DNA of 64,000 nt from assembly GCF_006345805.1 (NCBI RefSeq), contig NC_043019.1:22071360-22135359 (forward strand), written 5' to 3'. Made by a program: the position numbers and the translations under genes. Shown here in pieces: positions 1,482 through 42,121 of the stretch (position 1 is the stretch's first letter; each line of letters starts with the position of its first letter). The DNA comes from Octopus sinensis (Eukaryota). Under the pieces are notes generated by a model that was not told where the DNA came from, ran no database searches, and was given only the letters and a program-made list of their open reading frames with translations.

Positions 1482-4400
1482 TAAAATTCGTAATTGGAAA
1501 AAGAAAATTAAACAAAAGTAAAATAATCATTTAAAATTATAAAAATTAATTAGAAAAGTAACGAAACCCCCCAAACTCGAGAAAACAAATCATTAACAAA
1601 ATGTCTACTTATATAAAGGGTCGTATCAAAAGATTAATTTGAATTTAGGGCCGTAAAAATGAAGAGACGTGAATAAACTTTCAATAAAAAAATAGTGGGC
1701 GTAAGTTGAGACCTTCTCGACTACAAATGGAATAATTTCTACCCCGTTGCTTAGTCCTGCTAAGGATAGCGGTTAAATCTTCCTCAAACATCATGTCCTA
1801 CCTTAAGCAAGGTGGGGGGAAAAAACTGGGGAACACTAATAATGTAATCCTAAATATACCAAAAATATATGAAAATAAATGATATGGTCACGCCAGGAAC
1901 GGCTTGGGTAACAAGCTAGTGTGTTGTTTTAATCAGGACTGACTTGTCGTGGGGTGTAAGTGAGAAGTATCAACCGAACAACTTACCTGTTGCATGAAGG
2001 AAACCCTGAATGCTGAAGACCAAGTAAAAGATAGGCAAAAATATAAAGGAGGGGAGATGGAGGAATAAGGTTAAATTAATTAACAACTTTTTAAAATCAA
2101 TTTTCTATAGCAAATAATTACGACTGTTCCCCGTTACTCCTACCAACAGTAAGAATATTTCAAAAATGTTGTCAATCAAAATTTGAAAAAAGAATATCAC
2201 CGGGGTTAATTACTCAGTGACGCCATATGCATAAGAAAATGACAGTTGTTGAAATAAATGACAACCAACTTATGTCATTGGTTCCTTTGAGTTATTTCCA
2301 TTGTCTCGTTCTATTTAATTTATTCATTGTTAGCGGGAAAAAACCTATTAGATGAGAATCAAAACTTCGAAGGGAGAAAGGGAGAAAGAAGAAAAAAACT
2401 TCAAATCACCACATGAGGTAGAGAAATAGTAATAGACAATGTTCTTATTTAGTACCAAGTCAGTACCGATCTCTGATCAAAAGCATTATATCCACGACAA
2501 CCCCTTTTTTTATTTAGATTTAGAGTATATACATTATTCAGTTTCTTGTTGCGGCAGACCCAGGTTAGTCTAAATTAGTTAAGTCTATGATCAAAACCGT
2601 TCCAATCACGACCACAACATCAAGGACAGGACATTATTCAATACGTCCTTTTTTTTATATATAAGAAAGGGTGCGATTCACGATGTATTTTTTTACACTA
2701 CTAACGAGAATTAAATATAAACATGTCTGCCAGTAAAGTTTCTGAGAAGTTTTGTTTTGCGACAGGTGGTTGAAGAAAAAAGTAACACACACACATTGAA
2801 CAAGCAAGTGTTAAAAAGAAGGAGGTATCGTCGAAATAATATTTTAGGAATTCCATTACTAACACAATACCGTGAATGCGGTTAAGAGGAACGAGAAGAG
2901 AGATTAAATGTAGGAAGGCCAAAGATAAAGAGAGCGTCAGGGAAGGAGGGGACGAATGGAGATAGTGAATAACAGGTAAGGCAAAACAGTAAGGAAGGGG
3001 TAATAAGACGATTTAAAAAGACTCATATAAGAGGTAAATATGTTCTTAACACAAGTCAATTCTGGAATAGACCCCAGACGAAAGGTATTCCCTATCGTCT
3101 TTCTTGTGTGGGGGGGGGGCTTCTGGCTACCTGTCAATCAATCCATCTATTTTTTTTTGTTCTTTTCTTCCCTTTTACGATCCCTCTTGATCGAAAACCT
3201 ACGCCACCCCTTTTTTTTTTGTTTTTTGTTTTTTTCATCCCCCAAAAGAAAAGCTCTACCTTGTAACTTGTCCCATCTGTGTGCAGCCCTGTGTGGCCAA
3301 TAAAGAAACTTATATTTAAGGCTAACGGTTTTTGATTTAAGCACAAATCCAGTAATTTTGACGGGAGGGGGTTAGTCAATATCATCGACCTTAGTATTTG
3401 ACTGGTACTTTATTTTATTGACCCCGAAGGGATGAAAAGCAAAGTTTACATTGCCGGGATTTGGACTCAAGAATGTAAAGGGCCAAAACGAAAACTGCAA
3501 AGCATTTTCCCGATTTTCAAATAACTGTACCAGCCCGCAGCCTTTTATGTTTCAAGTTTTGGCACAAGGCCATCAATTTTAGGGAGAGGACTCAATCGAT
3601 ATTATCGATCCCAGTGCTTAACTGGTACATATTTTATCGATCCGGAAAGGATGAAACATAAAAGTCGAGCTCGAACCAGAAAAATAAAACAGAGGACGTT
3701 AAGTATCAATAAATCAAGTATAAAAAGACATCGGTGATAACCAAAAGTGTATGCATAGTACACAGGATAAAACAACAAAAACTGAAAAAGGAACAGTAAA
3801 AGAACCATAAAAAGGAACGTCAGGAGTAGCGTTGGCAAATTTCGGGAAACATGGGATTTAAGGATGCAGTGTCCTAACAACCGACATGGATAGTTTATTC
3901 TATGCTTTCCTTTCCATATCGGCTAACTCTGATAAGCATAAGGTTATAAAATCGGATTGTTGCCTAACACTCCGTTGTATTCCTTGCGCGAAACCGATTG
4001 GTAAGATCAGCCGTGATGCATATATAACACTGTGCATTTCGGATTATATATATATATATTAATCGAAAATGTACAGTATTATATATCCATTACGGCCGAT
4101 CTTACAAATCGGTTTCGCACTAGGGGTCCAACGGAGTGTTAGGTAACAGCCCCATAATATAACCCTGTACTCCTCAGAGATGACAGTTATAGAGAATATA
4201 TATATATTACAATGTAAGTAAAAGAGCAGGTATACTATTATATCATCAAGCAATACTGGTTATGGCATGTAACTGGTAAGAATATTACCATTGGCTTTGT
4301 GCCAGATATGGTCAGTAGACAACATTGATGGCTCTTCAGATAATCGGTACAAATCCAACATGCCATACCCAGTAAAATATTGCTTGACTATATATATATA

Positions 4401-12316: not shown

Positions 12317-12549
12317 ATGGTATTCTGTCGTAGTGCGTCGGTCGCTTCTTGTAATGGAAGGATGTATCGCGTAGACAAGCTGAGAGAACCTCGTCAAATC
12401 GTGGCTGGATATATTTTACCGGTTTTATTATTGATACAATGTTTCAGTTTATCAGTCGAGGCTGGCAACACAAATATAAACGGGAAAAGCGAATCATCAT
12501 CCTCACCAGATTTTAAAATTCCTCTCTGTTCAAATTTGCTGCTGGGACA
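12317..12549 (+). CDS. TM2D1: TM2D1 exon 1 (MVFCRS...LCSNLLLGQ), ending at U12-type donor ATATCCTT
   Basis: ORF from ATG 12317 with hydrophobic stretch YILPVLLLIQCFSLSVEA; ends CTG GGA CA|ATATCCTTT. Which ATG is used is uncertain. Confidence 0.85.
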
Positions 12550-12601
12550 ATATCCTTTTTTTCCCCTTTAAATTGTAATGTCTAAATACATGTGCATGTG
12601 T

Positions 12602-12639
<38 letters not shown>

Positions 12640-12689
12640 TATATATATATATATACATCATATATATATACATCATATATATATATATC

Positions 12690-12722
<33 letters not shown>

Positions 12723-15700
12723 ATATATCATATATATATATATATATACATCATATATATATATATATATATATATGGTAATTAAGGGTTTAGCAACGAT
12801 TTGCCTCACCACACACCGAATTTAGAAATAGCAGTCAAAGAGTTTTGGCTATTCTTTCTACTTAAAAGTAGCAAGAATAGCCAAAACTCTTTGACTGCTA
12901 TTTCTAAATTCGGTGTGTGGTGAGGCAAATTGTTGCTAAACCCTTAATTACTTAGTATTACTTAAACCTTCCTTGAATGGGGCTTTTACATGCCGAAATC
13001 TACTTGGTGAAATTAATGATTATTCCAAATTAATTAATTTCACCCTTTATTATTATATATATATATATGTATATACACACGCACACAAATGTATGTGTGT
13101 ACTCGCACTTGTATATGTATTTGTTGATACCTGTATTATATATTCATGTTTATTTATTCTCAGTTTTACGTTTTCTTTATTCTAAGTGATCGGATATAGT
13201 TTCTTTGAACTTTTTTATTTCTGGTTTATTGTCGATCACAGCTGGTCACAATTTGCTTTTTTTGTTACATTATTTTACCTTTCAAATGATGCCCCCACCC
13301 TCTTGTTGAGCAGCAGACCAGTGTGTGTTTATTATAAGCTTGTGAATTTTTGACGAAAACAACAGAAAAAATACTCATTTTAATTGTGATTGCTATTCCG
13401 AAAGTCTAATTTTTAAAATAATTGTCATTATCCAATCTATTTTATTCGTTAATTTCAGTTTTCTATTTTACACTTTTTGGCATTTTTTTTCTTTTAATAA
13501 TATCTTACATTCCTAACGCTGCTAAACATGCCTGTCTCACAAACATTGATCAAAAATCGATATACTATACACAAACACCATCATCATATAATGTCAAACT
13601 GTTTTTACGAAACCAAAATAGCTAGCTTTATCAGTATCGATATGTTTTATTAACTGCGAGTCACTTCCGATCAGAAGATGAAAGTCGTTCGTTCTGTGTC
13701 ACTCTTCTCCCTTATTCAGACCTAGTTTACCTAGGAAAACATTGTCAAATGTCTCCTCTGTTTTTAAGATAATTTGATATGATTTTGAGAGAGATTTTGC
13801 TGTTTTTACGAAAACAAAATACATAGCTTTCGGTAGTATCCACGATGACTATCCTAACAGGATCATCGTATTGTCCAAAAAGGGTACTACTTGAGAACAG
13901 TGGTCCCGGTGCGCGCACTCGCGTAGTCGCGCATCCCTTCTAGCTAGTCGTGACTAGTCGATCGTACAACGACTACCTAGCAAAGTAAATAACACAAAGT
14001 AAGGATCGACTAGTCATGACTAGCTAGCGCGGACGCGCGACTACGGGAGCGCGCGCGCACTAGGACCACTGTTCGCTAGTAGTACCCAAGGACACAAGTA
14101 AATAACACAAAAACACAAATTAAGGATCGACCAGTCATGACTAGCTAGCGTGATTGCGCGCACCGGGACCACTGTTCTCAAGTAGTACCCTCAAGTAATA
14201 ATGAATTCATCATTGTTATTATTACTATTATCTAATGTGACGTTCACGAATTATAAATGGCACCTGAGCACTGTATACAATAATTTCATTATTATTATAT
14301 TATACTGTGTGATTTGAGAGACCTTTTGCTGCTATATTACGAAAGCAAAATAGCTACCTATCTCCATTATCAACAATATTTTTATTAACTGCGAGTCATA
14401 CACATACATTATCTCAGACGTTTCTTCCCACTGCTATTTGGTTCACCTGTCATTTATTCAGAGTATATCTTTGGTACGTTATTCGGTTACTGTTTACTTT
14501 AATACCCGGCCACCAAAACAAGGAAGTGTCATAGGTGTAAAAAAAAAATTGGCAATCTTTCGTTTCTAGTAGACCTTTCCGTCGATGAAAGATTGCCAAA
14601 TTGGCAATTGTATAAACGAATATAAAAACAAAATTTGGGTTAATGTTTACAATATTACCCGGAAACGAAATAAAATAGTGCAACTGGTGTAGGAAACGAA
14701 TATGAAAACAAAAATGCGCAGGACTTCGGAAAATTCACAAGATCCGAGTTTTTCCCTCGTAACTTTTAGGAAAATGGAGTTGTTTTTTCTTTACATGAAA
14801 TTGTATATAAATATCTTTCAAATGGCATAGAGTACGCTTATGAAGAAATTTAAGAGTAAAATCTTTTCCGAGGGGTGGGGAGAGGACTTTCGGAAAATTC
14901 ACAAGATCCGAGTTTTTCCCTCGTAACTTTTAGGAAAATGGAGTTTTTTTTTTTTTACATGAAATTGTATATAAATATCTTTCAAATGGCATAGATTACG
15001 CTTATGAAGAAATTTAAGAGTAAAATCTTTTCCGAGGGGTGGGGAGAGGACTTTCGGAAAATTCACAAGATCCGAGTTTTTCCCTCGTAACTTTTAGGAA
15101 AATGGAGTTTTTTTTTTTTACATGAAATTGTATATAAATATCCTTCAAATGGCATAGATTACGCTTATAAAGATATTTGAGGGTAAAATATTTTCCGAGG
15201 GGTGGGGAGAGGACTTTCGGAAAATTCACAAGATCCGATTTTTTCCCTCGTAACTTTGAGGAAAATGGATATCTTTTAATGAAATTGTATATAAATACCT
15301 TTCAAACGACATGAATTACGGATGCCTAATGTGCCACAAACCCCTTATTTTTATTCGGAAAAAGTGTCCGTATATTAGCAATTTCTGTTGTTCCGTGTTT
15401 TCTTTCTGGCAATCTGTTTTTAAAGTACGATTCCAAGGCGCACATGGCGGAGACGTAACCGGACTCCTCCCCATTAATTTTTTTTTTTTTTTACGGAAGC
15501 CCACGTTTTCCGCTATGGAGATTCCGAGTATGAAAAAAAAATTTGCAAAAATCACAATTTCAATTTTCCACCCACCCCACCCCCACGCACTTCTTCATTT
15601 TTCACCTTTTTTCAGAAATTTTTTAGGGCGAAATAGATATGGAGATTATGATTCTGAAAATAAAAAAAAATAAAAGAAATTACCCCAACCCCCTCCCGAT

Positions 15701-18700
15701 TCTACGGCATTCAAGCAGGCTATCCACATGCTAGAAATAACAGCCAAATCTTAGCATTTTTTTTCCGGAATCATAATCTCCTATCCTACGTATTTCGTCC
15801 CCCCCCCCCCAAAAAAAATTCTGAAAACAAGTGAAAAATGAAGAAATGGGGTGGGGGGAATTGAAATTACGATTTTTGCAAAATTTTTTTTTTTTCACAA
15901 TCGGGATCTCCATAGCCGAAAACGTGGGTTTCTGTAAAAAAAAAAAAAAAATTAAGTGGGGGTGGGGGTCAGGTTACGTCTCTGCCATGTGCGCTATGAG
16001 ATATTAATCTGGCTCAGAATGAGTTCCAAAGAATGAATGAAATGTTACTGTTATTCTGAATGTATTTCTCAAAAGGAAATATACAACAGAAAAAATTGGA
16101 ACACTAGGTGAGAAATTCCAAATCAGTACTTTTCGTGTTTAAATATATATATTATTCCGTACCAGTTTATTTGTTGTCGAACCAAGTTGAATCATGCATC
16201 ATAAAATAGGGGATTACCTTCTCTCAATTTCTACTGTTTACACACCCTATTATGTTCTATATTGACGACTATATTTCGCACATACGGTTTCGCACCATAA
16301 GGGAGGTCACTGTGTTACAATTCTAGTTATTAATTTAGGTTATCATTGTAACTTACCTGAAGATCATGTGCATCCACAGGCGAAACTCATAGTAGCAACA
16401 GACTATCTCAACCAATATGAAAATATTAATCTATATTACATTATCGAGTTCCTTCCGACAGTCAACGCTAAAGATGTACATATATATATATATCTGTAAA
16501 CAAAAAGCTGCTCTATCATGACTGACGTTCGCTTACAACTATTGCCTCATGTCAAAACAATGACAGAGTAACACACACACATATATATATGAGATATCTG
16601 GTGCCACATAAAAAGCACCCAGTGCACTCTATGGAGTGGTTGGGCATTAGGAAGGGCATCAAGCTATAGAAACCATTCCACAACAGATATTGGAGCCTGA
16701 TGCAGCCCCTGGCCTTCCCAACTCTGGTCAAACTGTCTAACCTGTGCCAGCATGGAAAATGGACATTAAAAGATGATGGTGATGATATATACATATATAT
16801 GCACACAAAGACACCCATATATATATACACATATATTCACACACATCTATATACACATGTATATAAACATATATACATACATACACTTGAATATATATAT
16901 ACATATAAATATTTATGTGTTTAGTTATATATGTGTATGTACATTCCTACCTACTCGCATACATATGATAGGCTTCTTTCAGTTTCCATCTACCAAATCT
17001 CACAGGACTTTGGTCAATCCTGGGTGAACAACACTTGTTCAAAGTGGATATCCATGCTTGTACATATGTGTGTGTGTTATCTTTTACTTGTTTCAGTCAT
17101 TAAACTGTGGCCATGTTAGGGCACTGTCTTGAAGAATTTTAGTCAAACGAATTGACTCCAGTACTCATCAGTCTCTTTTTCTGAACTGCTGAGTTATGGG
17201 GCATAAATACTCTAATACCAGTTTTCAAGTGGTAAGTGGGGACAAACACAGACACAGTGACACACACATATGTGTATACATATAGTGACACACACGCATA
17301 TACATATATATATAACAGGTTTCATTCAGTTTCTGTCTACCAGATCTACTCACAAGGTTTTGGTCGGCCCAAAGCTATACTTGCCAAAGGTACCATGTAG
17401 TTCTTACCACATGTAGCAAGCTTCTTACCACACAGCAACTTTTATGTAATTTATAAATAAGACATGAGTAATAATACTTCGAAAATAAAGTTTAATATTT
17501 CATTTTGATTAAAATACTAACGACTTCAGAGCAAAACATCTCATTTACAGTTCACCTGCATTAAGCTTCTCTGATTATCCCTCACTTCCTCTCCATTTTT
17601 TGTTTTAGTTTGCATCATCCGGTGTAACTGATTTGTTGCATTTTATTATATGTAAGATAAGATTAAAAAAAGTTGAAAGGACTTTGAAATACAAAAGACA
17701 AACAGAACAACTAAGCAGAGACACTGTTATAGGAAGCGAGCAGATACGTTGTTTGATACTTTAGGAAAAACTACTTCATTAAGCTTAGAGAAAAGCAATG
17801 TCAAAAGTAGACAGAATGACTTCAGCTCATGTCAAGTGATTTAAAAGGTATAAATCTTATAAATTGGAACAAATTCAACAGCTTCAAATATTGATGTGTT
17901 AATCACAGAAAAAGTATGTATATATATTCATACAAAAAGATGTAATATATATATATATATATTGAGATATGGGGAAATATCTTACTCAGAAATAGGTTAG
18001 CAACAGGAAGGGCGTCTGGCCACAGAAAATCTGCCTCAGCAAATTTGTCCAAACTAAGCAAGTATGGAAACTGGATGTTGAAATGTTACACAATCTTTTC
18101 TATACTTTTTGGATGTGTGGTCAAGTGGTGCACTTTGCAATTATGTGGTTTCAGATTCAATCCTCTCAGGTAAAATCTTAGGCAAATATCTTCTACAGCT
18201 CCAAACTGACCAAGGCCTCCTAACTGGATTTGGTTGGCAGAAAGCTTGGTTCCCAACCACAATGGTTCCATGTTCAGTCTCACTGTGTAGCACCTTGGTA
18301 AGTGCCTTCTACTGTAGCCTCAGGCCAACCAAAGCCTTGTGAGCAGATTTGGTGGATAGAAACTGCAATAAGTACATTGTATATGTATCTACATATATCT
18401 ATGTGTGTTTGTGTTTATTTCCCCCGGTACTGCTTGACAACCATATTGGTGTGTTTACATCCCCATAACTTAGTGGTTCAACAAAAGAGACTGATAGAAT
18501 AAGTACCAAGCCATAATTCAATGGCTGGACCATGTAAAATAATGGTTTGTAATTTAGGCCCACGGCCTCCAATTTCTGAGGTGGGGGGTAGTAGTAGTTG
18601 ATAACGTCAACCCCAGTATTCGACTGGTGCTTTCATTGAAGCTTGAAGGGATGATTGCCAAAGTCGACTGTGGTAGGATATGATTTCAGAATCTAAAGAA

Positions 18701-21700
18701 GTATTACAAGACATTTTGTCTACTGTTCTAACAATTCTGTCTGCCCACCTCCAATTTAAGCAAGAAAACCAGTAGTTTTGTTGGAAGGGGAGGAAGTTGA
18801 TTATATTGGCCCTGTGTTCAACTGGCTGCTTATTATATTGACCCCTAAAGGATGAAAGGCGAAGTCAACCTCAGTGGAATTTGAACTCGGAACATGAATG
18901 AGTCAGAAGAAATGCCACTAAGCATTTTATCAAGAACAATAACAACTCTGCCAGATTACCACCTTAGAAACAATTTAAATAACTTTTTCTTTTATAGGCC
19001 CAAGGCCTGAAATTTTGCGGGAGGGTACTTGTCAATTACAGCAATCCTATTGCTCGACTGGTCCTTATTTTTATTGACCCCGAAAAGATAAAAGGCAAAA
19101 TTAACCTTGGTATTTCAACTCAGGACAATGATGGATGGCTGCTAAGCATTTTGTCCAGTGTGCTGACAATTCTGCTAGCATGCCACCTTAACCCTTCAGC
19201 ATTCAAACCGGCCATATCTGGCCAAAATATTTAACCTGTTTTATATTGAAACTGACCAGATCTTGCCACTCACCTCAGCCCTACCATGTCGTTCTAAAAC
19301 TAAAAAAATCACATCACTGAAATCTCTAAACTACAAGATAATGCATGATTAATTCAAACCATTTTAAATAAACAAACATCACATTTGACAGAATAATCTG
19401 AACACTAAAGGGTTAAGATCATACATTCTTAACTGAGAACTGAACCCAGGCCACCTGGTATCCTAACCACTATACTACTGATTATTATGATTATTTCTCA
19501 TATGTGATTATGAATGGAATGAATAAAATCTACCTAATAATTCTGCATTTCTTTTTCTTTTGTGAATGGGGTTAGATTCTACTTATTGAAATGTTTTGCA
19601 TTTATAATTAACTACTGATTTTATGAATCTGTAATTAAAGATTACGTTTGACAAATATTGTTTAAATGACAAAAAAAAAAAAAAAAAAAGAGCTTTAGTA
19701 GAAGTTAGCAGCTTTGTGTTGGCTGCTAATCTGAGATTATGGCAGGTTTAAACCTCAACACAGATAAGTGTCTGTAGTTGTTGTTGTTGTTGTTATAAGT
19801 ACACTGTGCTGCAGAATTTCAATTCTCTATTATCCAGCCTCTTCAGCTTGACATATTTCTCAGAGTTATTAAATATTTTATAGAAATGTTATAGGAATAA
19901 ACATTTTTTGTCTTTTCCTGATTTACATGAGTTTTTAAAGGATTACAAATGATGATGATGATGATGATATATATGTGTGTGTGTGTGTGTGCATTTATAT
20001 ATAGTGAAAGAGTGAAACAACATTGCATATATTACAGTGACATTCATTTACAATCATCACATGGTGCCGAGGCAAGGGATGAACACATACATTTGTAGAT
20101 ATATGTAAGTGTGTGTGTGTGTTTGCATGTTTCATATTATCTGTCTGTTCCTTAACCCTGTCTCAAATATGTCTGTGATGAACCAATCATTGATTCAAAA
20201 ACACAACAAGCCAAGAACTGTGACCAAGACACAAGAACTGTTGTTGGTAAGTTTGCATTTAAGATATTACATCTTCTGTCCCAATGTATGTAGAACTAAA
20301 AATGAGAAGGGAAGGGGGCAGGTCAGGCATTGTTGATAATTCCAGTAACTCACTCATTTGGAAGAAGTAAGCAGCAAAGAAGGAGGGGTTTGTGCCCCTA
20401 GACTCTGCAAACCTTCCAAGGTTGATGAAATCACCACAGTTAGTGTAAGCTTTGAATAGCAGCAACTTGATAGCATCAGGAGAATTTCTTAATGGGATAA
20501 TGTTTTGGGGAGGAAATACTAGAAAAATTGGTATGTGCAAGACCTAGTGAAATTAGGGTGGTGAGGTGATACAAGTGGATTGGGTGGGCCTGAGTGGAAA
20601 TGGCATACCTATCTACTAAAGGTCCATCAGCACTGGAGAAGCTGACATCATTATCATTTAACATCCGTTTTCCATACTGGCGTTATTAGATGGTTTAACT
20701 GGAGCTGTAAGCTAGAGACCTGCTCCAGGCTCCAGTCATTCGCTTTTGGCTTGGTTTCTACAGCTAGATGCCCTTCCTAATGCCAACTACTTTACAGAGT
20801 CTACTGGGTATCTTTTACATGTCAACTGCACAAGTGCCTTACACATGTCACTGGCATGAGAGCCTTTAGTAAAAGAAGCAGTGAGAAGATTGCAGGTATG
20901 TGTACCAGAGGTTGGAAACCTTCAACCTCAGTCTCTAGTTTGAGTTTAACTCTACATCTCAACGTACTATTCTCATATGGCACCTTCTTTGTGTAGTGCC
21001 ACAAACTTTTTAAGAATTCATCAAAAGCTGCAAAGTAGTCTTATGAGACAGAAAGAGTTGGTGATAATTGAAAGTTCAATACTTTCTTTATCCTGTTGAT
21101 TGTATTAACAGGAGCCGAGTCCTAATAGAATTTTTATAATGAAATTTTCTGGTAATTTTTTTAAAATGTGTTTTGTACGTATATCTGCACATGTTTTTAC
21201 CTCTGCTCGCTTTATCAACTCCTTCAACACTCCAACCCAGAAATATCAGTTCAACTAATTAGTTTAATTAGTTTTACAAAATTAATACATCTAATCTGTA
21301 TGATTATCAGCTTTTTGTTTTCAAAGTCTGAGTCATTTAGTAAGATATTTTTAAAATGGAGACTTACTTTTCCCATTGTTATTATCTAATACTTATAAAG
21401 TTATTCATCTGATCATTTTGCAGTGACATGTCGAACAGCTCCAAATATTACGTGTCGTGGAGAATCAAAGAATGAATCACAGAAATTCACAAGACACCTA
21501 CCCTGTAAATGGACGTAAGTCCTGGAGTTTTTAATTTTCCTTCTGTTTTTTATATTAAATTATCATCACTACCGTGCCGGTGGCACGTAAAGATCACCAT
21601 CCGATCGTGGCCGTTGCCAGCCTTGCCTGGCCCCCATGCCGGAGGCATGTAAAAAGCACCATCCGACCATGGCCGTTTGCCAGCCCCGTCTGGCACCTGT

Positions 21701-24700
21701 GCTGGTGGCACGTAAAAAGCACCCACTACACTCACGGAGTGGTTAGCGTTAGGAAGGGCATCCAGCCGTAGAAACATTGCCAGATCAGACTGGGCCTGGT
21801 GCAGCCTTCTGGCTTCCCAGACCCCAGTTGAACCGTCCAACCCATGCTAGCATGGAAAGCGGGTGCTAAATGATGATCATCATCTAACATCTATTGTCCA
21901 TGCTGGCATGAGTTGGACGGTTTGACCAGGGCTGGTAAGCTGAGGAGCTGCACCAGACTTCAGTCTGATTTGGCATGGTTTCTACAGCTGGATGCCCTTC
22001 CAAATGCCAACTACTCCAAGAGTGTAATGGGTGCTCTTACATGCCATCGGCACAGGTGCCAGTTGTGTAACACCGGTATCTGCCACGACTATGATTTCAC
22101 TTGACTTGCTGGGTCTTCTTCTCAAGCACGGTATATTACCAAGGTTTTGGTCATTTGTCATTGGCTCCATGAGGCCCAACGCTCAAGAGCTGCTTTTTAC
22201 GTGCCACTGGCATTGGCCACATTGCCTCACATTTCAGAGTCAGAGCACAATGTCTACTAAAGACATACATTTTTGATTCTTCATTATCATACCCACAGCT
22301 TCTTTCTGCACCCTTATGACCTATTCCTTATTTGTAATGAGTGAAAATGAACTGAAAACCACAAGGTTGGGGAGTAAACTTCTTGACCACATGCCTATAT
22401 CATCATCATTTAACAGCCATGTCCTACCATTCATGCCAGCATGGTACAGGTTGGATGGGTTGACAAGGATCCAGTATGTCCAGGCACCACATCATGCTCC
22501 ATGGACTGCATTGGCATGGTTTCTATGGCTGGATGCCCTTCCTAACACAGTGTGTACTGGGTGCAATTTCTGTGTCACCAGCACTATTGGGGCTGCCATG
22601 CAGCACTGAGAAGTTGGGGTCAGAGTAAGTTCTTGTTATGGAGGAGCTGCATGGATACTCACAATTAGGGGAGAAAGAATGAGAATTGGTGGTGTCTCTG
22701 AAGAGATAATGATGGAGATGCGATGTCTGAATGGCACCTCAAGGTACAAGGCGAGTAGTAGTGAGTGGGGATGCAGTAGCTAGGTGTATAGGTTGGGGTT
22801 GCAAGAGTGTATGAGGGGGAGAGGGACATCTGTAAAGATTGGGATGGGTTGAATGGAGGAGGCGCATGAATTGGGGAAGGTAGAGGGATGCTAGCAGCAG
22901 CAGCACGGTAATGGTGATATAGTTGACAGGGAGAGGAAAGAGATGACTTGCTTGAGTAGGTTGCTGGAGTGAGGTAGAGAGAGATGATGAAGTAGAAAAT
23001 AAGATTTGGAGAGAATCAAGCAGAACCCACAGTAAGTACTCCTGCAAGGAATTAGCTATCAGTTTATATAGTAATTAAATGACAATGTGTATGCATAAAG
23101 ATTGTGATATCTGGCCCCTTGCTGTACTCAAGAAGACACATCTGCCATAGCAGAATTGATACCAGTGCTAGTGCTACATAAAAAGCACTCAGTAAACTGT
23201 GGAGTGGTTGGTATAAGGAAGGGCATCCAACCATAGAAACCATGCTAGAACAGATCATAGAGCTTGATGTGGCTCCTGGCTTTACCAGTTCCAGTAAAAC
23301 CATCCAACCCATGCTACCTTGGAAAATTGACATTAAATGATGATATGAAGAAAAAAACAAAAAAACAATTGCCAGTCATGATGAATAAAATAGAGACAGC
23401 ATCAAAATATATAAATTATTTTTCTTAATGACTTTCTGAATGTCATTAGCATAAAAACACAGGTTTCAAAACACAGCAACATCCAACATATTCCAGAATC
23501 TAACGATGAAATTTTCTTTTTTTCTTTTCTGAAGAAAAATTTGTTAATGAGTTTTATCTTTGATTCTATCTCATTAAATCAGCTGTGATTCTGACATCAA
23601 CCTCATAAGCAATGCAAATTGATTTAGCTCTATTTTGCTAATGAGGTTCAAATTTCTCTTGCTTTATCTACTAATGAAAGTTAGATGTAAAATGTCATAA
23701 AGCTCATTATATTTCATCTCCTTGTTTTTAATTTAATTCACGGTTAGTTGAATCTTAACTGTTTAGAAGAATTTCTTTAAGCCATTTTGATACATGCATG
23801 ATTGTATCTGTATATTTCTATCTACCTCAACAAAATACAATTGGTTAATTTTATTTATTTTTTGTTTTTTATATTGTTTCCCTTCTTGCAGAAATGGTCA
23901 CTCATTTGAAACAGCTTTACTGTTATCAATATTCCTTGGTATGTTTGGAGTTGACAGATTTTATCTTGGTTACCCTGCTATTGGTAAGTCACTGCTATTA
24001 GTATTTTAGTATTTACTAAGAATTTTTATAAATATATGAACTATAATGTAAGTGAGCAGTTGTTGAGGTGACTAATTCAGTTGAGTGCTATGCTAAATGC
24101 TTTATATAGTAATTTTTGATGTTGTCCCTCTTGGGACAAATCTTGTTAAACTTTCGACTTTGTCTTTTCTCCATTCCAAAGGGCATCTACTGACAATGAA
24201 ATAGGTCTCTCTCAGTTTCAGTGCTGAATATTCAGTTGTTCAATCTCAACTAAATATACCATGCATGTACGATGCCCCCCCCCTCTTTTTTCCCCTGAAT
24301 ATGCACAGTTGAAATTAGAGTGTCTTTTATGCCATCAATGTTCCCTCAAAGATGGAGTTTGAGAATATCCTTCAAAGGCTGAAGAGATACTCTGAGTTAT
24401 TAAATCTGCTTTTTTTTTTTTATCTTTTTAGGACTTACCCTTATTTTTCTTGTCATTAAATCTTTATTTACATTTTTTTAGGGCTGCTGAAATTCTCAAC
24501 TCTGGGATTTATGTTCCTCGGACAACTAATTGACATCTTATTAATTGCTACCCAGGTATTTGTAACATGCTATTTATTTACAATCAATTACAATCAATAT
24601 AACCTTTTGTGTAGATCGTAAATGTTTTTAATCAGTCTTTTATCCAAAAACCTAGTGTTCTCCCTTGGTTTACTGTCATTCACTGTGTTTTAGCTGAGTT

Positions 24701-26533
24701 TGATTGAGTATTTGAACCTTTTCTCATTTATACTGAATCAAAACAAGACAAGATCTCTTGGCTTAATGTAAGATCTTCCTCAATTATAAACTTGGTACCA
24801 GCAAAAGAAAGAAAGTTTGCTATAGCTTACCAGCAATCACTTGATTTTATTTGAATCTATTTGAGTCCTCTCTTGTTATCTACTTCCTCTAAGATAAAAT
24901 TTGAAATAAAAATGAAAGCACGCCTGGCTTTTTTCAAAGTGTCTCTTGTTCATAAACTTGTCATGTGTAAATGAAACATTTGCTGAGAGCCAGGTTAAAT
25001 CCACAGAATGTTAGTCTTCTGGAATTGCCTCCTTCCAAGTTTTCCTGCAGCTGTCGATATGCAAGTGTGCAAGAGGGACATTAACTGTATCAGTATTTAT
25101 AGGTCTCGCTTAAGGCAGCAAACTGGCAGAATTCTTTTGCATTGCTGGGCAAAATGCTTAGCAGCATCTCATCTGTCTTTACATCCTGAGTTCAAATTCT
25201 GCCAAGGTTCACTTTGCCTTTCATCCTTTTGAGGTCAGTAAAATAAATACCAGTTATATAATAGGCGCAGGAGTGGCTGTGTGGTAAGTAGCTTGCTAAC
25301 CAACCACATGGTTCCGGGTTCAGTCCCACTGCGTGGCATCTTGGGCAAGTGTCTTCTGCTATAGCCCCGGGCCGACCAATGCCTTGTGAGTGGATTTGGT
25401 AGACGGAAACTGAAAGAAGCCTGTCATATATATGTATATATATGTGTATGTGTGTGTGTGTCTGTGTTTGTCCCCCTAGCATTGCTTGACAACTGATGCT
25501 GGTGTGTTTACATCCCCGTCACTTAGCGGTTTGGCAAAAGAGACCGATAGAATAAGTACTGGGCTTACAAAGAATAAGTCCCGGGGTTGATTTGCTTGAC
25601 TAAAGGCGGTGCTCCAGTATGGCCGCAGTCAAATGACTGAAACAAGTAAAAGAGTAATCACTGAGGTCAGTGTAATCAACTTAGCCCCTTCCACGAAATT
25701 GCTGGCCTTGTGCCAGTATTTGAAACAATATTAAAAGTTTCACAGGGCCTGCAAGACACTAAGCATAGCAATATTCTTCAGACCAATACAATAGAAATAG
25801 AAAATAAAATAAAGAAAAACTGTTCTTTGGTAATAGGGATATAGACACAGGCATGGCTGTAATCTTGTATTTTATTTATTAAGAATTTCACTGCCAGCCC
25901 CGTCTGGCCTCCGTGCCAGTGGCACGTAAAAAGCACCATCCAATCGTGGTCGTTGTCAGCCTCGTCTGGCACGTAAAAAGCACCCACTACACTCATGGAG
26001 TGGTTGGTGTTAGGAAGGACATCCAGCTGTAGAAACACTGCCAGATCAGACTGGGCCTGGTGCAGCCTTCTGGCTTCCCAGGCCCCAGTTGAACCTATTT
26101 CTTTATTACCCACAAGGGGTTAAACACAGAGGGGACAAACAAGGACAGACATAGGTATTAAGTCGATTACATCGACCCCAGTGCGTAACTGGTACTTTAT
26201 TTATCGACCCAGATAGGATGAAAGGCAAAGTCGACCTCGGCGGAATTTGAACTCACAACGTAACGCAGACGAAATACCGCTAAGCATTTCGCCCGGCGTG
26301 CTAACGTTTCTGCCAGCTTGCCGCCTTTTGAACCGTCCCCAGTTGAACCGTCCAACCCATGCTAGCATGGAAAGCGAACTTTAAACGATGATGATGATGA
26401 TGTATTTTATTTATTTATTTTTTAGGTTGTGAAACCAGCTGATGGATCTGACTATGTCATTGACTATTATGGAGCTGTTTTGACCAGACTATCAATGGAT
26501 AATGAGACTTATATCAAACCACCAAATTACTAA
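12317..26533 (+). CDS. TM2D1: TM2 domain-containing protein 1 (beta-amyloid binding protein-like), 6 coding exons, 225 aa from the first ATG
   Basis: Exons 12317-12549, 20167-20246, 21424-21514, 23892-23983, 24482-24555 and 26426-26533 join in frame (678 nt including the stop). The product has a signal-peptide-like N-terminus, CSNLLLGQYVCDEPIIDSKTQ, the TM2 signature ALLLSIFLGMFGVDRFYLGYPAIGLLKFSTLGFMFLGQLIDILLIATQ, and the TM2D1-type tail VVKPADGSDYVIDYYGAVLTRLSMDNETY. A second in-frame ATG lies at 12362. Confidence 0.95.
12786..12943. mobile_element. Palindromic MITE, TTAA|GGG...CCC|TTAA (Kolobok-like)
   Basis: Near-perfect 79 bp arms (12778-12856 / 12873-12951); TTAA on both sides with purine termini. 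Superfamily assignment is inference. Confidence 0.7.
13881..14191. mobile_element. MITE-like element with perfect 37 bp TIRs
   Basis: AGGGTACTACTTGAGAACAGTGGTCCCGGTGCGCGCA at 13881-13917 and its reverse complement at 14155-14191; internal subrepeats. Confidence 0.75.
14721..15310 (+). repeat. Tandem repeat, ~163 bp unit, ~3.5 copies
   Basis: Unit GGACTTTCGGAAAATTCACAAGATCCGAG... starts at 14721, 14884, 15048 and 15211. Confidence 0.9.
15438..15994. mobile_element. Foldback/MITE element with ~220 bp imperfect TIRs
   Basis: GCGCACATGGCGGAGACGTAACC... at the left and ...GGTTACGTCTCTGCCATGTGCGC at the right; the arms remain complementary inward. Confidence 0.75.
19192..19412. mobile_element. 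piggyBac-like MITE
   Basis: TTAA|CCCTT...AAGGG|TTAA termini. Confidence 0.75.
20167..20246 (+). CDS. TM2D1: TM2D1 exon 2 (YVCDEPIIDSKTQQAKNCDQDTRTVV)
   Basis: Preceded by U12 branch site TTCCTTAAC (20148-20156); followed by GTAAG donor at 20247. Confidence 0.92.
20290..20660 (-). mobile_element. Decayed LINE endonuclease (APE) fragment
   Basis: Minus-strand translation ...AYTNCGDFINLG... resembles the APE GDFN motif; heavily degraded. Confidence 0.35.
21424..21514 (+). CDS. TM2D1: TM2D1 exon 3 (TCRTAPNITCRGESKNESQKFTRHLPCKW)
   Basis: ttttgcag acceptor, GTAAGT donor, phase 1 to 2, Cys pattern of the TM2D1 ectodomain. Confidence 0.93.
23892..23983 (+). CDS. TM2D1: TM2D1 exon 4 (NGHSFETALLLSIFLGMFGVDRFYLGYPAI)
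   Basis: cttgcag acceptor, GTAAG donor; TM2 domain first helix and the DRFYLG motif. Confidence 0.96.
24482..24555 (+). CDS. TM2D1: TM2D1 exon 5 (GLLKFSTLGFMFLGQLIDILLIATQ)
   Basis: tttttag acceptor, GT donor at 24556; TM2 second helix. Confidence 0.95.
25261..25655 (+). mobile_element. tRNA-derived SINE, family A, full length (TM2D1 intron 5)
   Basis: Head GGCGCAGGAGTGGCTGTGTGG...GGTTCAGTCCC, tail GACTGAAACAAGTAAAAGAG; paralogues at 41492-41891 (-), 56088-56478 (-), 57578-57965 (-) and 59353-59739 (+). Confidence 0.9.
26096..26325 (-). mobile_element. SINE family B nested inside an RTE 3'UTR copy (25900-26402)
   Basis: The host repeat breaks at CCCCAGTTGAACC and resumes after the SINE. 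Confidence 0.8.
26426..26533 (+). CDS. TM2D1: TM2D1 exon 6 (VVKPADGSDYVIDYYG...KPPNY*)
   Basis: ttttag acceptor, 35 codons plus TAA at 26531-26533. Confidence 0.95.
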   Translation, partial: VVKPADGSDYVIDYYGAVLTRLSMDNETYIKPPNY

Positions 26534-35364: not shown

Positions 35365-36300
35365 ATCATCATTATCGTTTAACGTCCGCTTTCCATGCTA
35401 GCATGGGTTGGATGGTTCAACTGGGGTCTGGGGAGCCCGAAGGCTGCACCAGGCCAGTCTGATCTGGCAGTGTTTCTACAGCTGGATGCCCTTCCTAACG
35501 CCAACCACTCCGAGAGTGTAGTGGGTGATTTTATGTGCCACCGACACAGGTGCCAGACGAGGCTGGCGAACGGCCACGCTCGGATGGTGTTTTTTATGTG
35601 CCACCGACACAAGTGCCAGACGAGGGTGGCAGACGGCCACGCTCGGATGGTGTTTTTTATGTGCCACCGACACAGGTGCCAGACGAGGTTGGCGAACGGC
35701 CACGATCGGATGGTGTTTTTTATGTGCCACAGACACAAGTGCCAGAGGAGGGTGGCAGACGGCCACGCTCGGATGGTGTTTTTTATGTGCCACCGACACA
35801 GGTGCCAGACGAGGCTGGCGAACGGCCACGCTCGGATGGTGTTTTTTATGTGCCACCGACACAGGTGCCAGACGAGGGTGGCAGACGGCCACGATCGGAT
35901 GGTGTTTTTTATGTGCCACCGACACAGGTGCCAGACGAGGCTGGCGAACGGCCACGCTCGGATGGTGTTTTTTATGTGCCACCGACACAGGTGCCAGACG
36001 AGGTTGGCGAACGGCCACGCTCGGATGGTGTTTTTTATGTGCCACCGACACAAGTGCCAGACGAGGGTGGCAGACGGCCACGCTCGGATGGTGTTTTTTA
36101 TGTGCCACCGACACAAGTGCCAGACGAGGGTGGCAGACGGCCACGCTCGGATGGTGTTTTTTATGTGCCACCGACACAGGTGCCAGACGAGGTTGGCGAA
36201 TGGCCACGATCGGATGGTGTTTGTTACGTGCCCACAGCACGGAGGCCAGTCGATGCGGTACTGGCTACGGCCATGTTCGGATGGTTTTCTTAAGTTCCAC
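35365..36300 (-). mobile_element. RTE-type LINE 3'UTR copy with an expanded 63 bp tandem array
   Basis: Matches 43700-43985; (ATC)n tail at the left end; 11 units at 35533-36225. Confidence 0.85.
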
Positions 36301-38266: not shown

Positions 38267-39370
38267 ACTACTACTACTACTACTATGACAAAAGCAGCTG
38301 AACCACAATAGCAATAACAACAAAAGCAACATCACAACAAGTGAGATAAATTCAACCAACTCTACAATCACCACCAGCAATAACAACAAATTCCACCAAA
38401 ATCACCAACAAATACCATCATTATCACTATTATCACTACCACTCCTAACATTATCACCAGAACATCATCAATTCAATAACCTCTGCAACTACCAACACCA
38501 ACATCTTCAATAGCATTGCACTTGCTTAATTCCACCACCACCACCACCGCCACCACCACCACCAGACTAAATGTCAGTCAATAAAATCTCTCTGTCTTAT
38601 AAAGATGGTAATTCCATCTGCTTCAGGACCAAAATCTTGACACAGTATAACCTATAATATAGTTTAATAAGGATGGAACCGGCTGGCAATTTGGTCTTGG
38701 AGCTGTTTAGACTGATGGTGGTGGTGGTGGTGATGGCGGCAGTGGTGGTGGTGGTGGTGGTGGTGGTGGTGGTGGTGGTGGTGGTGATGGCGACAGTGGC
38801 GGTGGTGGTGGTGGTGATGGCGACAGTGGCGGTGGTGGTGGTGGTGATGGCGGCAGTGGCGGTGGTGGTGATGGTGGTGGTGGTGGTGATGGCGGCAGTG
38901 GCAGTGGTGGTGGTGGTGGTGGTGATGGCGGCAGTGGCTGTGGTGGTGGTGGTGATGTCGGCAGTGGCGGTGGTGGTGATGGTGGTGGTGGTGGTGATGG
39001 CGGCAGTGGCGGTGGTGGTGGTGGTGGTGGTGGTGGTGGTGATGATGGCGGCAGTGGCGGTGGTGGTGGTGGTGGTGGTGATGGCGGCAGTGGCAGTGGT
39101 GGTGGTGGTGGCGGCAGCGGCGGTAGTGGTTGTGGTGGTGGTGGTGGTGATGGCGGCAGTGGCAGTGGTGGTGGTGATGTCGGCAGTGGCGGTGGTGGTG
39201 ATGGTGGTGGTGGTGGTGATGGCGGCAGTGGCGGTGGTGGTGGTGATGGCGGCAGTGGCGATGGTGGTGGTGGTGGTGGTGGCATTGGTTGCGGCAGCAG
39301 CAGCAGTGGTAGTGGTAGTGGTAGTGGTGGTGGGTGGGTTGGAGGTAATGATGATGATGATGATGATGAT
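38160..39370. repeat. Trinucleotide microsatellite complex (AAC/TAC/TGC; GTG-based array)
   Basis: Visible repeats; source of the spurious poly-Thr/Val/Pro ORFs. Confidence 0.9.
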
Positions 39371-39659: not shown

Positions 39660-39840
39660 AGAAGGTGAAAGACAGACAGACAGAGTAAATGGACAGACAG
39701 AGAGACAGACAGACAGATAGACAGATAGACAGACAGACAGACAGATAGACAGACAGACAGACAGATAGACAGACAGACAGATAGACAGACAGACAGATAG
39801 ACAGATAGACAGACAGACAGACAGATAGACAGACAGACAC

Positions 39841-39879
<39 letters not shown>

Positions 39880-40289
39880 TAGACAGACAGACAGACAGAT
39901 AGACAGACAGACAGATAGACACAGACAGACAGACAGACAGACAGACAGACGACAGACAGACAGACAGACAGATAGACAACAGATAGACAAACAGACAGAT
40001 AGACAGACAGATAAACAGACAGACAGACAAACAGACAAACAGATAGACAGACAGACAGATAGACAGACAGACGACAGATAGATAGACAGACAGACAGACA
40101 GATAGACAGACAGACAGATAGACAGACAACAGATAGACAGATAGACAGACAGACAGACAGATAGACAGACAGACAGACAGACGACAGACAGACAGACAAA
40201 CAGATAGACAGACAGACAGACAGATAGACAGACAGACAGACAGATAGACAGACAGACAGATAGACAGACAGACAGACAGACAGACAGGC

Positions 40290-40320
<31 letters not shown>

Positions 40321-40506
40321 TAGACAAACAGATAGACAAACAGACAGATAGACAGACAGATAAACAGACAGACAGACAAACAGACAAACAGATAGACAGA
40401 CAGACAGATAGACAGACAGACAGACAGATAGACAGACAGACAGATAGACAGACAGACAGACAGACAAACAGATAGACAGATAGACAGACAGACAGACAAG
40501 ACAGAG

Positions 40507-40537
<31 letters not shown>

Positions 40538-41027
40538 TAGATAGACAGACAGACAGATAGACAGATAGACAGACAGATAGACAGACAGACAGACAGACAG
40601 ATAGACAGACAGATAGACAGATAGACAGACAGACAGACAAGACAGAGAGATAGACAGACAGACAGACAGACAGATAGATAGACAGACAGACAGATAGATA
40701 GACAGACAGATAGACAGATAGACAGACAGACAGACAGACAGATAGACAGACAGACAGACAGAGTGACAGATAGACAGACAGATAGACAGACAGATAGACA
40801 GACAGACAGACGGATAGACAGATAGACAGACAGATAGACAGATAGACAGACAGACAGACAGACAGATAGACAGATAGACAGACAGATAGACAGACAGACA
40901 GACAGATAGACAGACAGATAGACAGACAGACAGACAGATAGACAGACAGATAGACAGACAGACAGACAGATAGACAGACAGACAGACAGATAGACAGACA
41001 GATAGACAGACAGATAGACAGACAGAC

Positions 41028-41062
<35 letters not shown>

Positions 41063-41110
41063 TAGATAGATAGATAGATAGATAGACAGACGGACAGACA
41101 GACAGACAGA
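39660..41110 (+). repeat. ~1.45 kb compound (GACA)n/(GATA)n microsatellite
   Basis: Visible; source of the spurious LSVC-repeat ORFs. Confidence 0.97.
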
Positions 41111-42121
41111 AAGGAGGAAGGAAGGAAGGAAGAAGCAACAAGAAAGAAGGAATGTAAGTAAAAAGCGTGAATGAAAAAAGAATGAAGGATGAAAGAGTGG
41201 AAGGCAGGAAGAAAGAAAATAATGAAAGGAAGGAAAAAAAAGGAAGAAAGTTTCTGTCTATCAAATCCATCCATTCACTAGGTTTTGATCGATTTCATGC
41301 TATAGTAGAAGACACTTGTCCAAGATAGCAAGCAATGGGGATTGAACCTAAGACTACATGGTTGGGAAGCAAACTTCTTGACCACACACACACACATCAA
41401 AGTTTGATAAGTGCCAAGCATGAAACTCTTGGCCCTTGATTTCACTTTGTAACTTATGCAAATTAAAATAATAAAAGGATATTATACATATACTCTTTTA
41501 CTTGTTTCAGTCATTTGACTGTGGCCATGCTGGAGCACTGCCTTTAGTCAAGCAAATCGACTCCGGGACTTATTCTTTGTAAGCCCAGTACTTATTCTAT
41601 CGGTCTCTTTTGCCAAACTGCTAAGTGACGGGGACGTAAACACACCAGCATCGGTTGTCAAGCAATGCTAGGGGGTCAAACACAGACACACAAACACACA
41701 CATATATATATACATTTACATATATATGACAGGCTTCTTTCAGTTTCCGTCTACCAAATCCACTCACAAGGCATTGGTCGGCCTGGGGCCATAGTAGAAG
41801 ACACTTGCCCAAGATGCCACGCAGTGGGACTTAACCCGGAACCATGTGGTTGGTTAGCAAGCTACTTACCACACAGCCACTCCTGCGCTTATATGTAGAT
41901 AAGGCCTATATTATTATATGTTACAAAGGATATTCCTTAATTCTTCCTCTCTGAAGATGAAATAGTTGGCTTATATGAAAATCTTTGGTCAATGATCTAT
42001 GCACCATATGCACAGCTGATCTAGAAGTCCCTTATTTAATCTAACTGCTCTGCAATTATGCTTGAATTATTAATTACACACTCTAAAGTGATACCACTTT
42101 TTTTGCTTGTTTGTTCTTTAA

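What the first reader, a model, noticed from the sequence alone, without database searches (positions are those of the whole stretch)
12550..20166. Rare AT-AA minor-spliceosome intron in TM2D1
The 5' end ATATCCTTT and branch site TTCCTTAAC (20148-20156) are textbook U12 signals, but the only frame-preserving acceptor is AA (..ctgtctcAA|ATATGTCTGT), not AC or AG. U12 introns are known to tolerate non-canonical terminal dinucleotides but AT-AA is uncommon, and at 7.6 kb and full of transposons this one is large. GT-AG-only annotators would mis-model the gene; intron retention ends the protein at GQYPFFPL*.
Basis: partly seen in the sequence, partly recalled or inferred. Interest (0 to 1): 0.72.

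Follow-up and report, generated by a model that had tools for sequence, protein, structure and literature searches.

The report
Octopus TM2D1 AT-AA minor-spliceosome intron
The first intron of the octopus TM2D1 gene is a genuine, ancient minor-spliceosome (U12-type) intron that ends in the unusual letters AA, but this intron class and this gene's minor intron are already documented, so the finding is correct yet ordinary.

Summary
The window is Octopus sinensis chromosome DNA, identical to GCA_006345805.1. It carries a six-exon TM2D1 orthologue on the + strand. Intron 1 (12550-20166, 7617 nt) starts ATATCCTTT. It has the window's only TTCCTTAAC, with the branch A 11 nt before the 3' end, and it ends ..CTCAA|ATATG. 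Only this junction, or a register giving the same mRNA, restores the conserved motif LLLGQYVCDEP. Introns 2-5 are GT-AG.

The terminal A is not a base-call error: O. vulgaris and O. bimaculoides also have AA.

An intron with U12-type signals sits at the same codon position and phase in every intron-bearing species examined:
- AT-AC: human (published U12 lists), Ptychodera.
- GT-AG: spider, Capitella, Lottia, Haliotis.
- AT-AG: Argonauta.
- AT-AA: Nematostella.

Annotators do mis-model the gene. One O. vulgaris model skips exon 1, and an old O. bimaculoides model reads into the intron. RefSeq proteins for O. sinensis and O. bimaculoides already contain the correct junction.

AT-AA is the commonest non-canonical U12 class, about 1.1% of conserved animal minor introns. 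No RNA evidence could be reached here.

Verdict: a real new member of a known kind, of low interest. The one mildly interesting point is the range of terminal dinucleotides at a single ancient intron position.

The parts
12362..12549 (+). TM2D1 coding exon 1 (signal-peptide region up to ..CSNLLLG + CA of the Gln codon). RefSeq uses an upstream in-frame ATG at 12317.
   Evidence: XP_029650015.2 sequence
12550..12558 (+). U12-type 5' splice site ATATCCTTT (A-type)
   Evidence: identical in O. vulgaris and O. bimaculoides
12550..20166 (+). Intron 1, 7617 nt, phase 2, termini AT-AA
12605..12776 (.). (TA)n microsatellite inside intron 1. Its length differs between O. sinensis and O. vulgaris.
14720..15320 (.). 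164-bp tandem repeat, 3.7 copies, inside intron 1
16958..18506 (.). Stretch of intron 1 holding three fragments of a ~400-bp SINE-like interspersed repeat (16958-17015, 17080-17369, 18243-18506)
20148..20156 (+). U12 branch-point sequence TTCCTTAAC. The presumed branch A is 20155, 11 nt before the intron end.
20165..20166 (+). 3' terminal dinucleotide AA
   Evidence: the same AA in O. vulgaris and O. bimaculoides
20167..20246 (+). Coding exon 2 (A + YVCDEPIIDSKTQQAKNCDQDTRTVV + G)
21424..21514 (+). Coding exon 3 (preceded by a GT-AG intron)
23892..23983 (+). Coding exon 4 (start of the TM2 domain)
24482..24555 (+). Coding exon 5
26426..26533 (+). Coding exon 6, including the TAA stop

Best explanation
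Intron 1 of the Octopus sinensis TM2D1 orthologue is a U12-dependent (minor-spliceosome) intron of the A-type, with AT-AA termini.

Proposed mechanism, inferred from established knowledge of U12 splicing:
- U11 and then U6atac pair with /ATATCCTTT at 12550.
- U12 pairs with TTCCTTAAC and bulges the A at 20155.
- The 3' splice site is chosen mainly by its short distance from the branch point (11 nt), not by an AG or AC dinucleotide. Cleavage therefore falls after A20166 and joins CA|A into a Gln codon.

The intron is ancient. It sits at the same codon position in a cnidarian, deuterostomes and protostomes. On that sampling, the Octopus AA most parsimoniously arose from a protostome GT-AG state through an AT-AG stage, which Argonauta still has.

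If the intron is not removed, translation stops 7 codons into it (…GQYPFFPL*). Correct minor splicing is therefore required for a functional TM2-domain protein.
For: Shown directly:
- The 5' splice site and branch site each match their 9-nt consensus perfectly.
- The branch A lies 11 nt from the 3' end. The reviewed optimum is 11-13 nt (PMC3584512).
- Among 2522 open-frame donor/acceptor combinations, only 12550/20166 and its same-mRNA registers keep LLLGQYVCDEP.
- GQY[VILFMTY]C is conserved in all mollusc, annelid, hemichordate and spider orthologues examined.
- AA is present in O. sinensis (the window, identical to L007), O. vulgaris and O. bimaculoides.

An intron at the same position and phase, with U12-type signals:
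- Human, AT-AC: GGGACA|ATATCCTC...TTCCTTAACTTTTTTTTTTAC|ATATAT. It is listed as U12 and is retained on CENATAC depletion (PMC8280824 supplements).
- Ptychodera, AT-AC.
- Nematostella, AT-AA.
- Uloborus, GT-AG.
- Capitella, GT-AG.
- Lottia, GT-AG.
- Haliotis, GT-AG.
- Argonauta, AT-AG.

Other support:
- RefSeq proteins XP_029650015.2 and XP_052831854.1 contain the junction peptide.
- AT-AA is a documented natural U12 class.
Against: - No RNA evidence could be reached with these tools: no junction reads, cDNA or lariat data.
- The RefSeq models are predictions, and I could not inspect their support.
- ATAT occurs at both ends of the intron, so registers shifted by -1 to +4 nt give the same mRNA. 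'AT-AA' rests on anchoring the donor to the U12 consensus, not on the mRNA sequence.
- The run CAAA at the 3' end offers neighbouring cleavage sites. U12 3' site choice is known to be error-prone, so some mis-spliced, frame-shifted product is possible.
- The evolutionary polarity (GT-AG to AT-AG to AT-AA) rests on few taxa. No squid, cuttlefish or Nautilus was sampled.
Confidence: 0.9

Rival explanations
1. The same mRNA is produced, but the chemical cleavage sites sit in another register. An example is 12552-20168, which would be an AT-AT intron. Other possibilities are shifts of -1, +1, +3 or +4 nt.
For: ATAT is repeated at both junctions, so six registers give an identical mRNA. The enumeration lists 12552/20168 with the same peptide. 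AT-AT is also a documented U12 class.
Against: A donor at 12552 would read ATCCTTTTT and lose the /ATATCC register that defines U12 5' splice sites. Every orthologue places /RTATCCTT immediately after the CA of the Gln codon.
Confidence: 0.04
2. The terminal AA is an assembly or base-call error, and the real intron is an ordinary AT-AC (or AT-AG).
For: The window is a single assembly, and the human and Ptychodera orthologous introns are AT-AC.
Against: Independent assemblies of two other species have the same A. O. vulgaris reads CTCAA|ATATG and O. bimaculoides reads CTTAA|ATATG. The O. vulgaris assembly differs from the window in microsatellite length, so it is not the same data.
Confidence: 0.01
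3. In vivo the main transcript uses a different junction. It could be a distant in-frame AC or AG acceptor inside exon 2 (for example 20202 or 20235), or an alternative upstream first exon as in the O. vulgaris model. In that case the AT-AA junction is minor or unused.
For: Open-frame alternatives exist. One public model (CAI9739409.1) uses an upstream exon and an AG inside exon 2.
Against: - These alternatives delete the conserved CxxLLxGQYxCxxPxID segment, or the signal-peptide exon, which every orthologue retains.
- The alternative acceptors lie 47 nt or more from the branch A, far outside the 11-13 nt optimum.
- In the window the AG used by the O. vulgaris model is AA (tcaaaaaca), so that acceptor does not exist here.
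Confidence: 0.04
4. The intron is usually retained, or the locus is decaying, and no full-length protein is made.
For: A-type minor introns show relatively high basal retention in human cells (PMC8280824). An old O. bimaculoides model is the read-through product.
Against: All six exons are intact, in frame and 97% identical at protein level between Octopus species, and 73% identical to Argonauta. The splice signals are perfectly conserved across the three Octopus species.
Confidence: 0.01

Closest known systems
Human TM2D1 U12-type intron (chr1:61723787-61724956, NM_032027; AT-AC)
   Same: It is the orthologous intron. It has the same codon position and phase (CA| of the Gln in GQY). It has an A-type 5' splice site ATATCC and the same branch site TTCCTTAAC, and exon 2 also begins ATAT.
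   Different: The human intron ends AC, 13 nt after the branch A, and is 1.17 kb long. The Octopus intron ends AA, 11 nt after the branch A, and is 7.6 kb long.
Documented AT-AA U12 introns (for example human/mouse RASGRP4 and FLJ21106, human MSH3; Sheth et al. 2006). The class makes up 1.1% of conserved animal minor introns (Larue & Roy 2023).
   Same: The same terminal dinucleotides combined with consensus U12 5' splice site and branch site.
   Different: A different host gene and lineage. Here the AA state can be placed within a series of orthologues that carry AT-AC, GT-AG and AT-AG.
U12 subtype switching between AT-AC and GT-AG through AT-AG intermediates (Burge 1998; Sheth 2006, Table 3; reviewed in PMC3584512)
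   Same: A single orthologous intron shows GT-AG (gastropods, annelid, spider), AT-AG (Argonauta), AT-AA (Octopus, Nematostella) and AT-AC (human, Ptychodera).
   Different: The reputedly disfavoured intermediate states persist here in living lineages. The direction of change is inferred from few taxa.

Membership tests
U12-type (minor-spliceosome) intron | 5' splice site matching /RTATCCTT immediately after the exon | tested here: met
   ATATCCTTT at 12550-12558, a 9/9 match
U12-type (minor-spliceosome) intron | Branch-point sequence TCCTTRAY close to the 3' end (optimum 11-13 nt from the branch A) | tested here: met
   TTCCTTAAC at 20148-20156 is the only copy in the window. The distance from A20155 to 20166 is 11 nt (optimum from PMC3584512).
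U12-type (minor-spliceosome) intron | No distinct polypyrimidine tract between the branch site and the 3' splice site | tested here: inconclusive
   Only 10 nt (CCTGTCTCAA) separate the branch site from the 3' end, so there is no room for a tract. The 20 nt upstream of the branch site are moderately pyrimidine-rich. No quantitative score was computed.
U12-type (minor-spliceosome) intron | The orthologous intron at the same position is U12-type in other species | tested here: met
   Human intron listed as U12 AT-AC. U12-type signals at the same codon and phase in Ptychodera, Nematostella, Uloborus, Capitella, Lottia, Haliotis and Argonauta.
U12-type (minor-spliceosome) intron | Removal depends on the U11/U12/U4atac/U6atac snRNPs | not testable with these tools
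   This needs a knock-down or in vitro splicing. O. sinensis is among the species analysed in the minor-intron conservation comparison of a published survey, which also reports relative minor-intron enrichment in molluscs (PMC10639083).
U12-type (minor-spliceosome) intron | The spliced junction is observed in RNA | not testable with these tools
   No octopus transcript contig was reachable. The evidence is indirect only: the RefSeq proteins contain LLLGQYVCDEP.
AT-AA subtype of U12 introns | The intron begins AT and ends AA when the donor is anchored on the U12 consensus | tested here: met
   12550-12551 is AT and 20165-20166 is AA. This is the only register that both matches /ATATCC and keeps the frame and the homology.
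AT-AA subtype of U12 introns | The terminal A is a genuine genomic base | tested here: met
   The same AA is present in O. vulgaris GCA_951406725.2 and O. bimaculoides GCA_001194135.2.
TM2D1 / biscotti (CG10795) orthologue group | TM2 domain (PF05154) plus the N-terminal CxxLLxGQYxC motif, with best hits named TM2D1 / CG10795 | tested here: met
   815 hits. The top hits are named TM2 domain-containing protein CG10795, biscotti or TM2D1-like, and all carry PF05154. tblastn with human TM2D1 finds five of the six exons.

The most novel reading that the evidence does not exclude
The TM2D1 minor intron is a natural 'allelic series' for U12 terminal dinucleotides at one ancient position.
- AT-AC in deuterostomes.
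- GT-AG in a spider, an annelid and gastropods.
- AT-AG in Argonauta.
- AT-AA independently in Octopus and in the cnidarian Nematostella.

On this reading octopods would record a G-type to A-type subtype switch caught at its supposedly unfit intermediate stages. The 3' terminal base would be nearly neutral at this intron because the 3' site is measured from the branch point.
Probability: 0.4. Interest if true: 0.35.

Novelty: new member of a known kind. Interest (0 to 1): 0.2.

Why it matters
The practical value lies in annotation. Two public gene models are broken by this intron: O. vulgaris CAI9739409.1 and the 71-aa O. bimaculoides fragment. The old Nematostella model has the same problem. 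The case illustrates how GT-AG-only pipelines truncate genes that contain minor introns.

Biologically it adds one well-supported AT-AA example, together with an orthologous series covering four terminal-dinucleotide states. That series could serve as a test bed for 3' splice-site selection and for the A-type-specific factor CENATAC. It does not change what is known about minor splicing.

Tried and rejected
1. Sequencing error at 20166: rejected, because three species agree.
2. A GT-AG, GC-AG or AT-AC junction that keeps the protein: none exists. Every such open-frame pair deletes conserved residues.
3. An autonomous transposon inside the intron: no ORF above 120 aa.
4. Long ORFs elsewhere in the window as neighbouring genes: eight of the nine ORFs scanned had no Pfam hit. 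The ninth gave only a weak 12-residue SOCS_box match with no stretch passing on its own, taken as spurious. Those at 35.4-36.5 kb and 38.6-41.3 kb lie in tandem repeats. The other four were not explained.
5. Literature search for 'TM2D1' with 'U12' in main text: one irrelevant paper. The gene did turn up in the supplementary tables of the CENATAC paper.
6. Bivalves as a mollusc outgroup: uninformative, because the Mizuhopecten and Mercenaria genes are intronless.
8. ARAGORN found no tRNA in the window, so the SINE-like repeat is not recognisably tRNA-shaped to that tool.
9. Transcript evidence: the exact 210-aa protein is not in the protein collection.
Full report
**What is in the sequence.**
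Exon 1 of a + strand gene runs from an ATG at 12362 to 12549 and ends ...CTGCTGGGACA. An in-frame upstream ATG lies at 12317. The next bases are ATATCCTTT (12550-12558). About 7.6 kb downstream lies TTCCTTAAC (20148-20156), followed by CCTGTCTCAA and then ATATGTCTGTGATGAACC.... Reading through the donor ends the frame at GQYPFFPL*.

Exon 1 came from the ORF read, and I set all the boundaries by inspection. The exons are 12362-12549, 20167-20246, 21424-21514, 23892-23983, 24482-24555 and 26426-26533. Together they give a clean 210-aa ORF. Introns 2-5 are all GTAAGT/GTATTT...YAG. Intron 1 is the only non-GT-AG intron.

**Gene and organism.**
The 210-aa product is 97% identical to O. bimaculoides 'TM2 domain-containing protein CG10795' and 73% identical to the Argonauta hians protein. 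Hundreds of metazoan TM2D1/biscotti orthologues follow, all with Pfam PF05154.

The 90% cluster also holds O. sinensis XP_029650015.2. That protein equals my model plus 15 residues from the upstream ATG. The window is base-for-base identical to O. sinensis GCA_006345805.1 CM016881.1, even across a hypervariable (TA)n microsatellite, whereas O. vulgaris differs there. The intron length is also the same, 7617 nt. The window is therefore O. sinensis.

**Is the junction right?**
I enumerated every donor in 12480-12574 against every acceptor in 20090-20239 that keeps the frame open through exon 3, which gave 2522 pairs. Only 12550/20166, and registers that yield the very same mRNA, retain LLLGQYVCDEP.

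The motif C-x-x-L-L-x-G-Q-Y-x-C-x-x-P-x-I-D straddles the junction. It is conserved in gastropods, bivalves, an annelid, a hemichordate and a spider and, by my recollection of the sequence, in human. With the donor at 12550, in-frame AC or AG acceptors do exist (20202, 20232, 20235, 20238). They lie 47 nt or more past the branch A and delete conserved residues.

ATAT occurs on both sides of the intron, so shifts of -1 to +4 nt give the same mRNA. The label AT-AA therefore depends on anchoring the donor at /ATATCC. Every orthologue supports that anchoring.

**Is the AA real?**
- O. bimaculoides (L001): GGGACA|ATATCCTTTTC ... TTCCTTAACCCTGTCTTAA|ATATGTC.
- O. vulgaris (L008): GGGACA|ATATCCTTT ... 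TTCCTTAACCCTGTCTCAA|ATATGTC.

**Orthologous introns.**
All of these lie after the CA of the Gln codon in GQY, in phase 2.

| Species (locus) | Termini | Intron | Junction sequence |
|---|---|---|---|
| Human | AT-AC | 1170 nt | ATATCCTC...TTCCTTAAC-T10-AC\|ATATAT; listed as U12, retained on CENATAC depletion |
| Ptychodera flava (L009) | AT-AC | 432-977 | ATATCCTTT...TTCTTTAACAATACTTAC\|A |
| Nematostella vectensis (L010) | AT-AA | 2792-3045 | ATATCCTTT...CTCCTTGACCATCTCTTAA\|G |
| Uloborus diversus (L012) | GT-AG | 402-2229 | GTATCCTTT...TTTCTTAACATTTGAG\|A |
| Capitella teleta (L006) | GT-AG | 656-792 | GTATCCTTT...TTCTTAACTGTTGAAAG\|A |
| Lottia gigantea (L005) | GT-AG | 635-866 | GTATCCTTT...TTTCTGAACCAATAAATAAG\|A |
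| Haliotis rubra (L003) | GT-AG | 1117-2136 | GTATCCTTT...AACTTAACGTGTGAAG\|G |
| Argonauta hians (L002) | AT-AG | 1201-2937 | ATATCCTTT...TCCCTTAACAATGTCTCAG\|G |

The two bivalve genes examined, Mizuhopecten and Mercenaria, have no introns at all.

The intron therefore predates the cnidarian-bilaterian split and carries U12-type signals wherever it survives. The sampled protostomes other than octopods are GT-AG. The most parsimonious path to Octopus is then GT-AG, to AT-AG (as in Argonauta), to AT-AA. This is an inference from few taxa.

**Mechanism (inferred from established U12 biology).**
U11 and U6atac read the 5' splice site, and U12 reads the branch site. The 3' site is set mainly by distance from the branch point. 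The reviewed optimum is 11-13 nt (PMC3584512), and the distance here is 11 nt. The identity of the last base is tolerated as AT-AN. The same review notes that non-canonical termini support U12 splicing, often with reduced efficiency, and that 3' site choice is error-prone. Some slippage within CAAA, or intron retention giving a premature stop, is therefore plausible but untested.

**Comparison with what is known.**
- AT-AA U12 introns were catalogued by Sheth et al. 2006: 3 in human, 4 in mouse and 1 in Arabidopsis.
- A survey of more than 3000 genomes found AT-AA to be the most common non-canonical minor-intron terminus in animals and plants. In animals it accounts for 823 conserved minor introns (1.117%), against 0.89% for AT-AG (PMC10639083 and its Table S1).
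- O. sinensis was among the species compared in that survey.
- CENATAC selectively promotes splicing of AT-AN introns, and human TM2D1 is in its affected set.

Each element of the finding is therefore an instance of something already described.

**Annotation consequences.**
- O. vulgaris CAI9739409.1 (158 aa) replaces exon 1 with an unrelated upstream exon. It enters exon 2 at an internal AG (L008 29132-29133), a site that reads AA in the window.
- UniRef A0A0L8FJA1 (O. bimaculoides, 71 aa) is exactly the read-through product ...GQYPFLSFKL.
- The old Nematostella model starts MYKCDE... The gene range starts at an ATG at L010 1501-1503, and I infer a 3-nt first exon joined to the AG one base past the true 3' end.
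- The RefSeq models for O. sinensis and O. bimaculoides are correct.

**Intron content.**
- No ORF exceeds 120 aa.
- There is a (TA)n tract at 12605-12776 and a 164-bp tandem repeat of 3.7 copies at 14720-15320.
- 1357 of 7617 nt match repeats elsewhere in the window.
- Three of those matches are fragments of a ~400-bp SINE-like family with about 15 copies or more in the window.
- Most of the intron aligns with the 9.4-kb O. bimaculoides intron at 70-92% identity.

**Verdict.**
It is a new member of a well-known class in a gene already known to host a U12 intron, and reference annotation already handles it correctly. Interest is low. The modest extra is the four-state series of terminal dinucleotides at one ancient intron position.

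Noticed in passing
L010 2679-3046 (Nematostella vectensis DS469549.1): The cnidarian TM2D1 orthologue also has an AT-AA U12-type intron at the same codon: ATATCCTTT...CTCCTTGACCATCTCTTAA|G, 254 nt. The old 144-aa model (P0088) misses exon 1. It appears to use a 3-nt ATG exon spliced to the AG one base downstream.
   Followed up: partly
L004 1001-1567 and L011 301-930: The TM2D1 orthologues of two distantly related bivalves, Mizuhopecten yessoensis and Mercenaria mercenaria, are single-exon genes. This suggests that all introns, including the U12 one, were lost in bivalves, perhaps by retro-replacement.
   Followed up: no
L008 10001-35643 (O. vulgaris OX597836.1); cluster member P0123: Two public gene models are broken by this intron. 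CAI9739409.1 (158 aa) skips exon 1 and uses the AG at L008 29132-29133 inside exon 2. UniRef A0A0L8FJA1 (71 aa) is the intron read-through.
   Followed up: yes
window 41474-41933 (- strand), with copies at e.g. 25261-25656, 56091-56504, 57578-57964 and 59349-59718: A ~400-bp SINE-like interspersed repeat family has about 15 full or partial copies or more in the window. The copy at 41483-41924 is flanked by direct repeats AATATCCTTT, which look like a target-site duplication. This explains two of the four ATATCCTTT hits. ARAGORN does not call any copy a tRNA.
   Followed up: partly
window 35529-36232, 38716-39289, 39670-41110: Three large tandem arrays: a 63-bp unit x11, a GGT-rich 30-69-bp unit, and (AGAC)n x362. 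They create spurious long ORFs in several frames on both strands, up to 596 aa. The ORFs from these arrays that were scanned gave no Pfam hit apart from one weak 12-residue SOCS_box match.
   Followed up: yes
window 12317-12364: There are two in-frame start codons. RefSeq O. sinensis uses 12317 (225 aa, MVFCRSASVASCNGRM...). RefSeq O. bimaculoides starts at the equivalent of 12362 (210 aa). Which one is used is unknown.
   Followed up: no
L003 1-569 and L005 1-124 (- strand): In Haliotis and Lottia an NDK-domain (PF00334) gene lies head-to-head immediately upstream of TM2D1. I did not establish whether the same neighbour lies upstream of 12300 in the window.
   Followed up: no
window 20195-20199 versus L008 29130-29133 and L001: The Lys codon in exon 2 is AAA in O. 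sinensis but AAG in O. vulgaris and O. bimaculoides. The G creates the cryptic AG that the O. vulgaris model used as an acceptor.
   Followed up: yes
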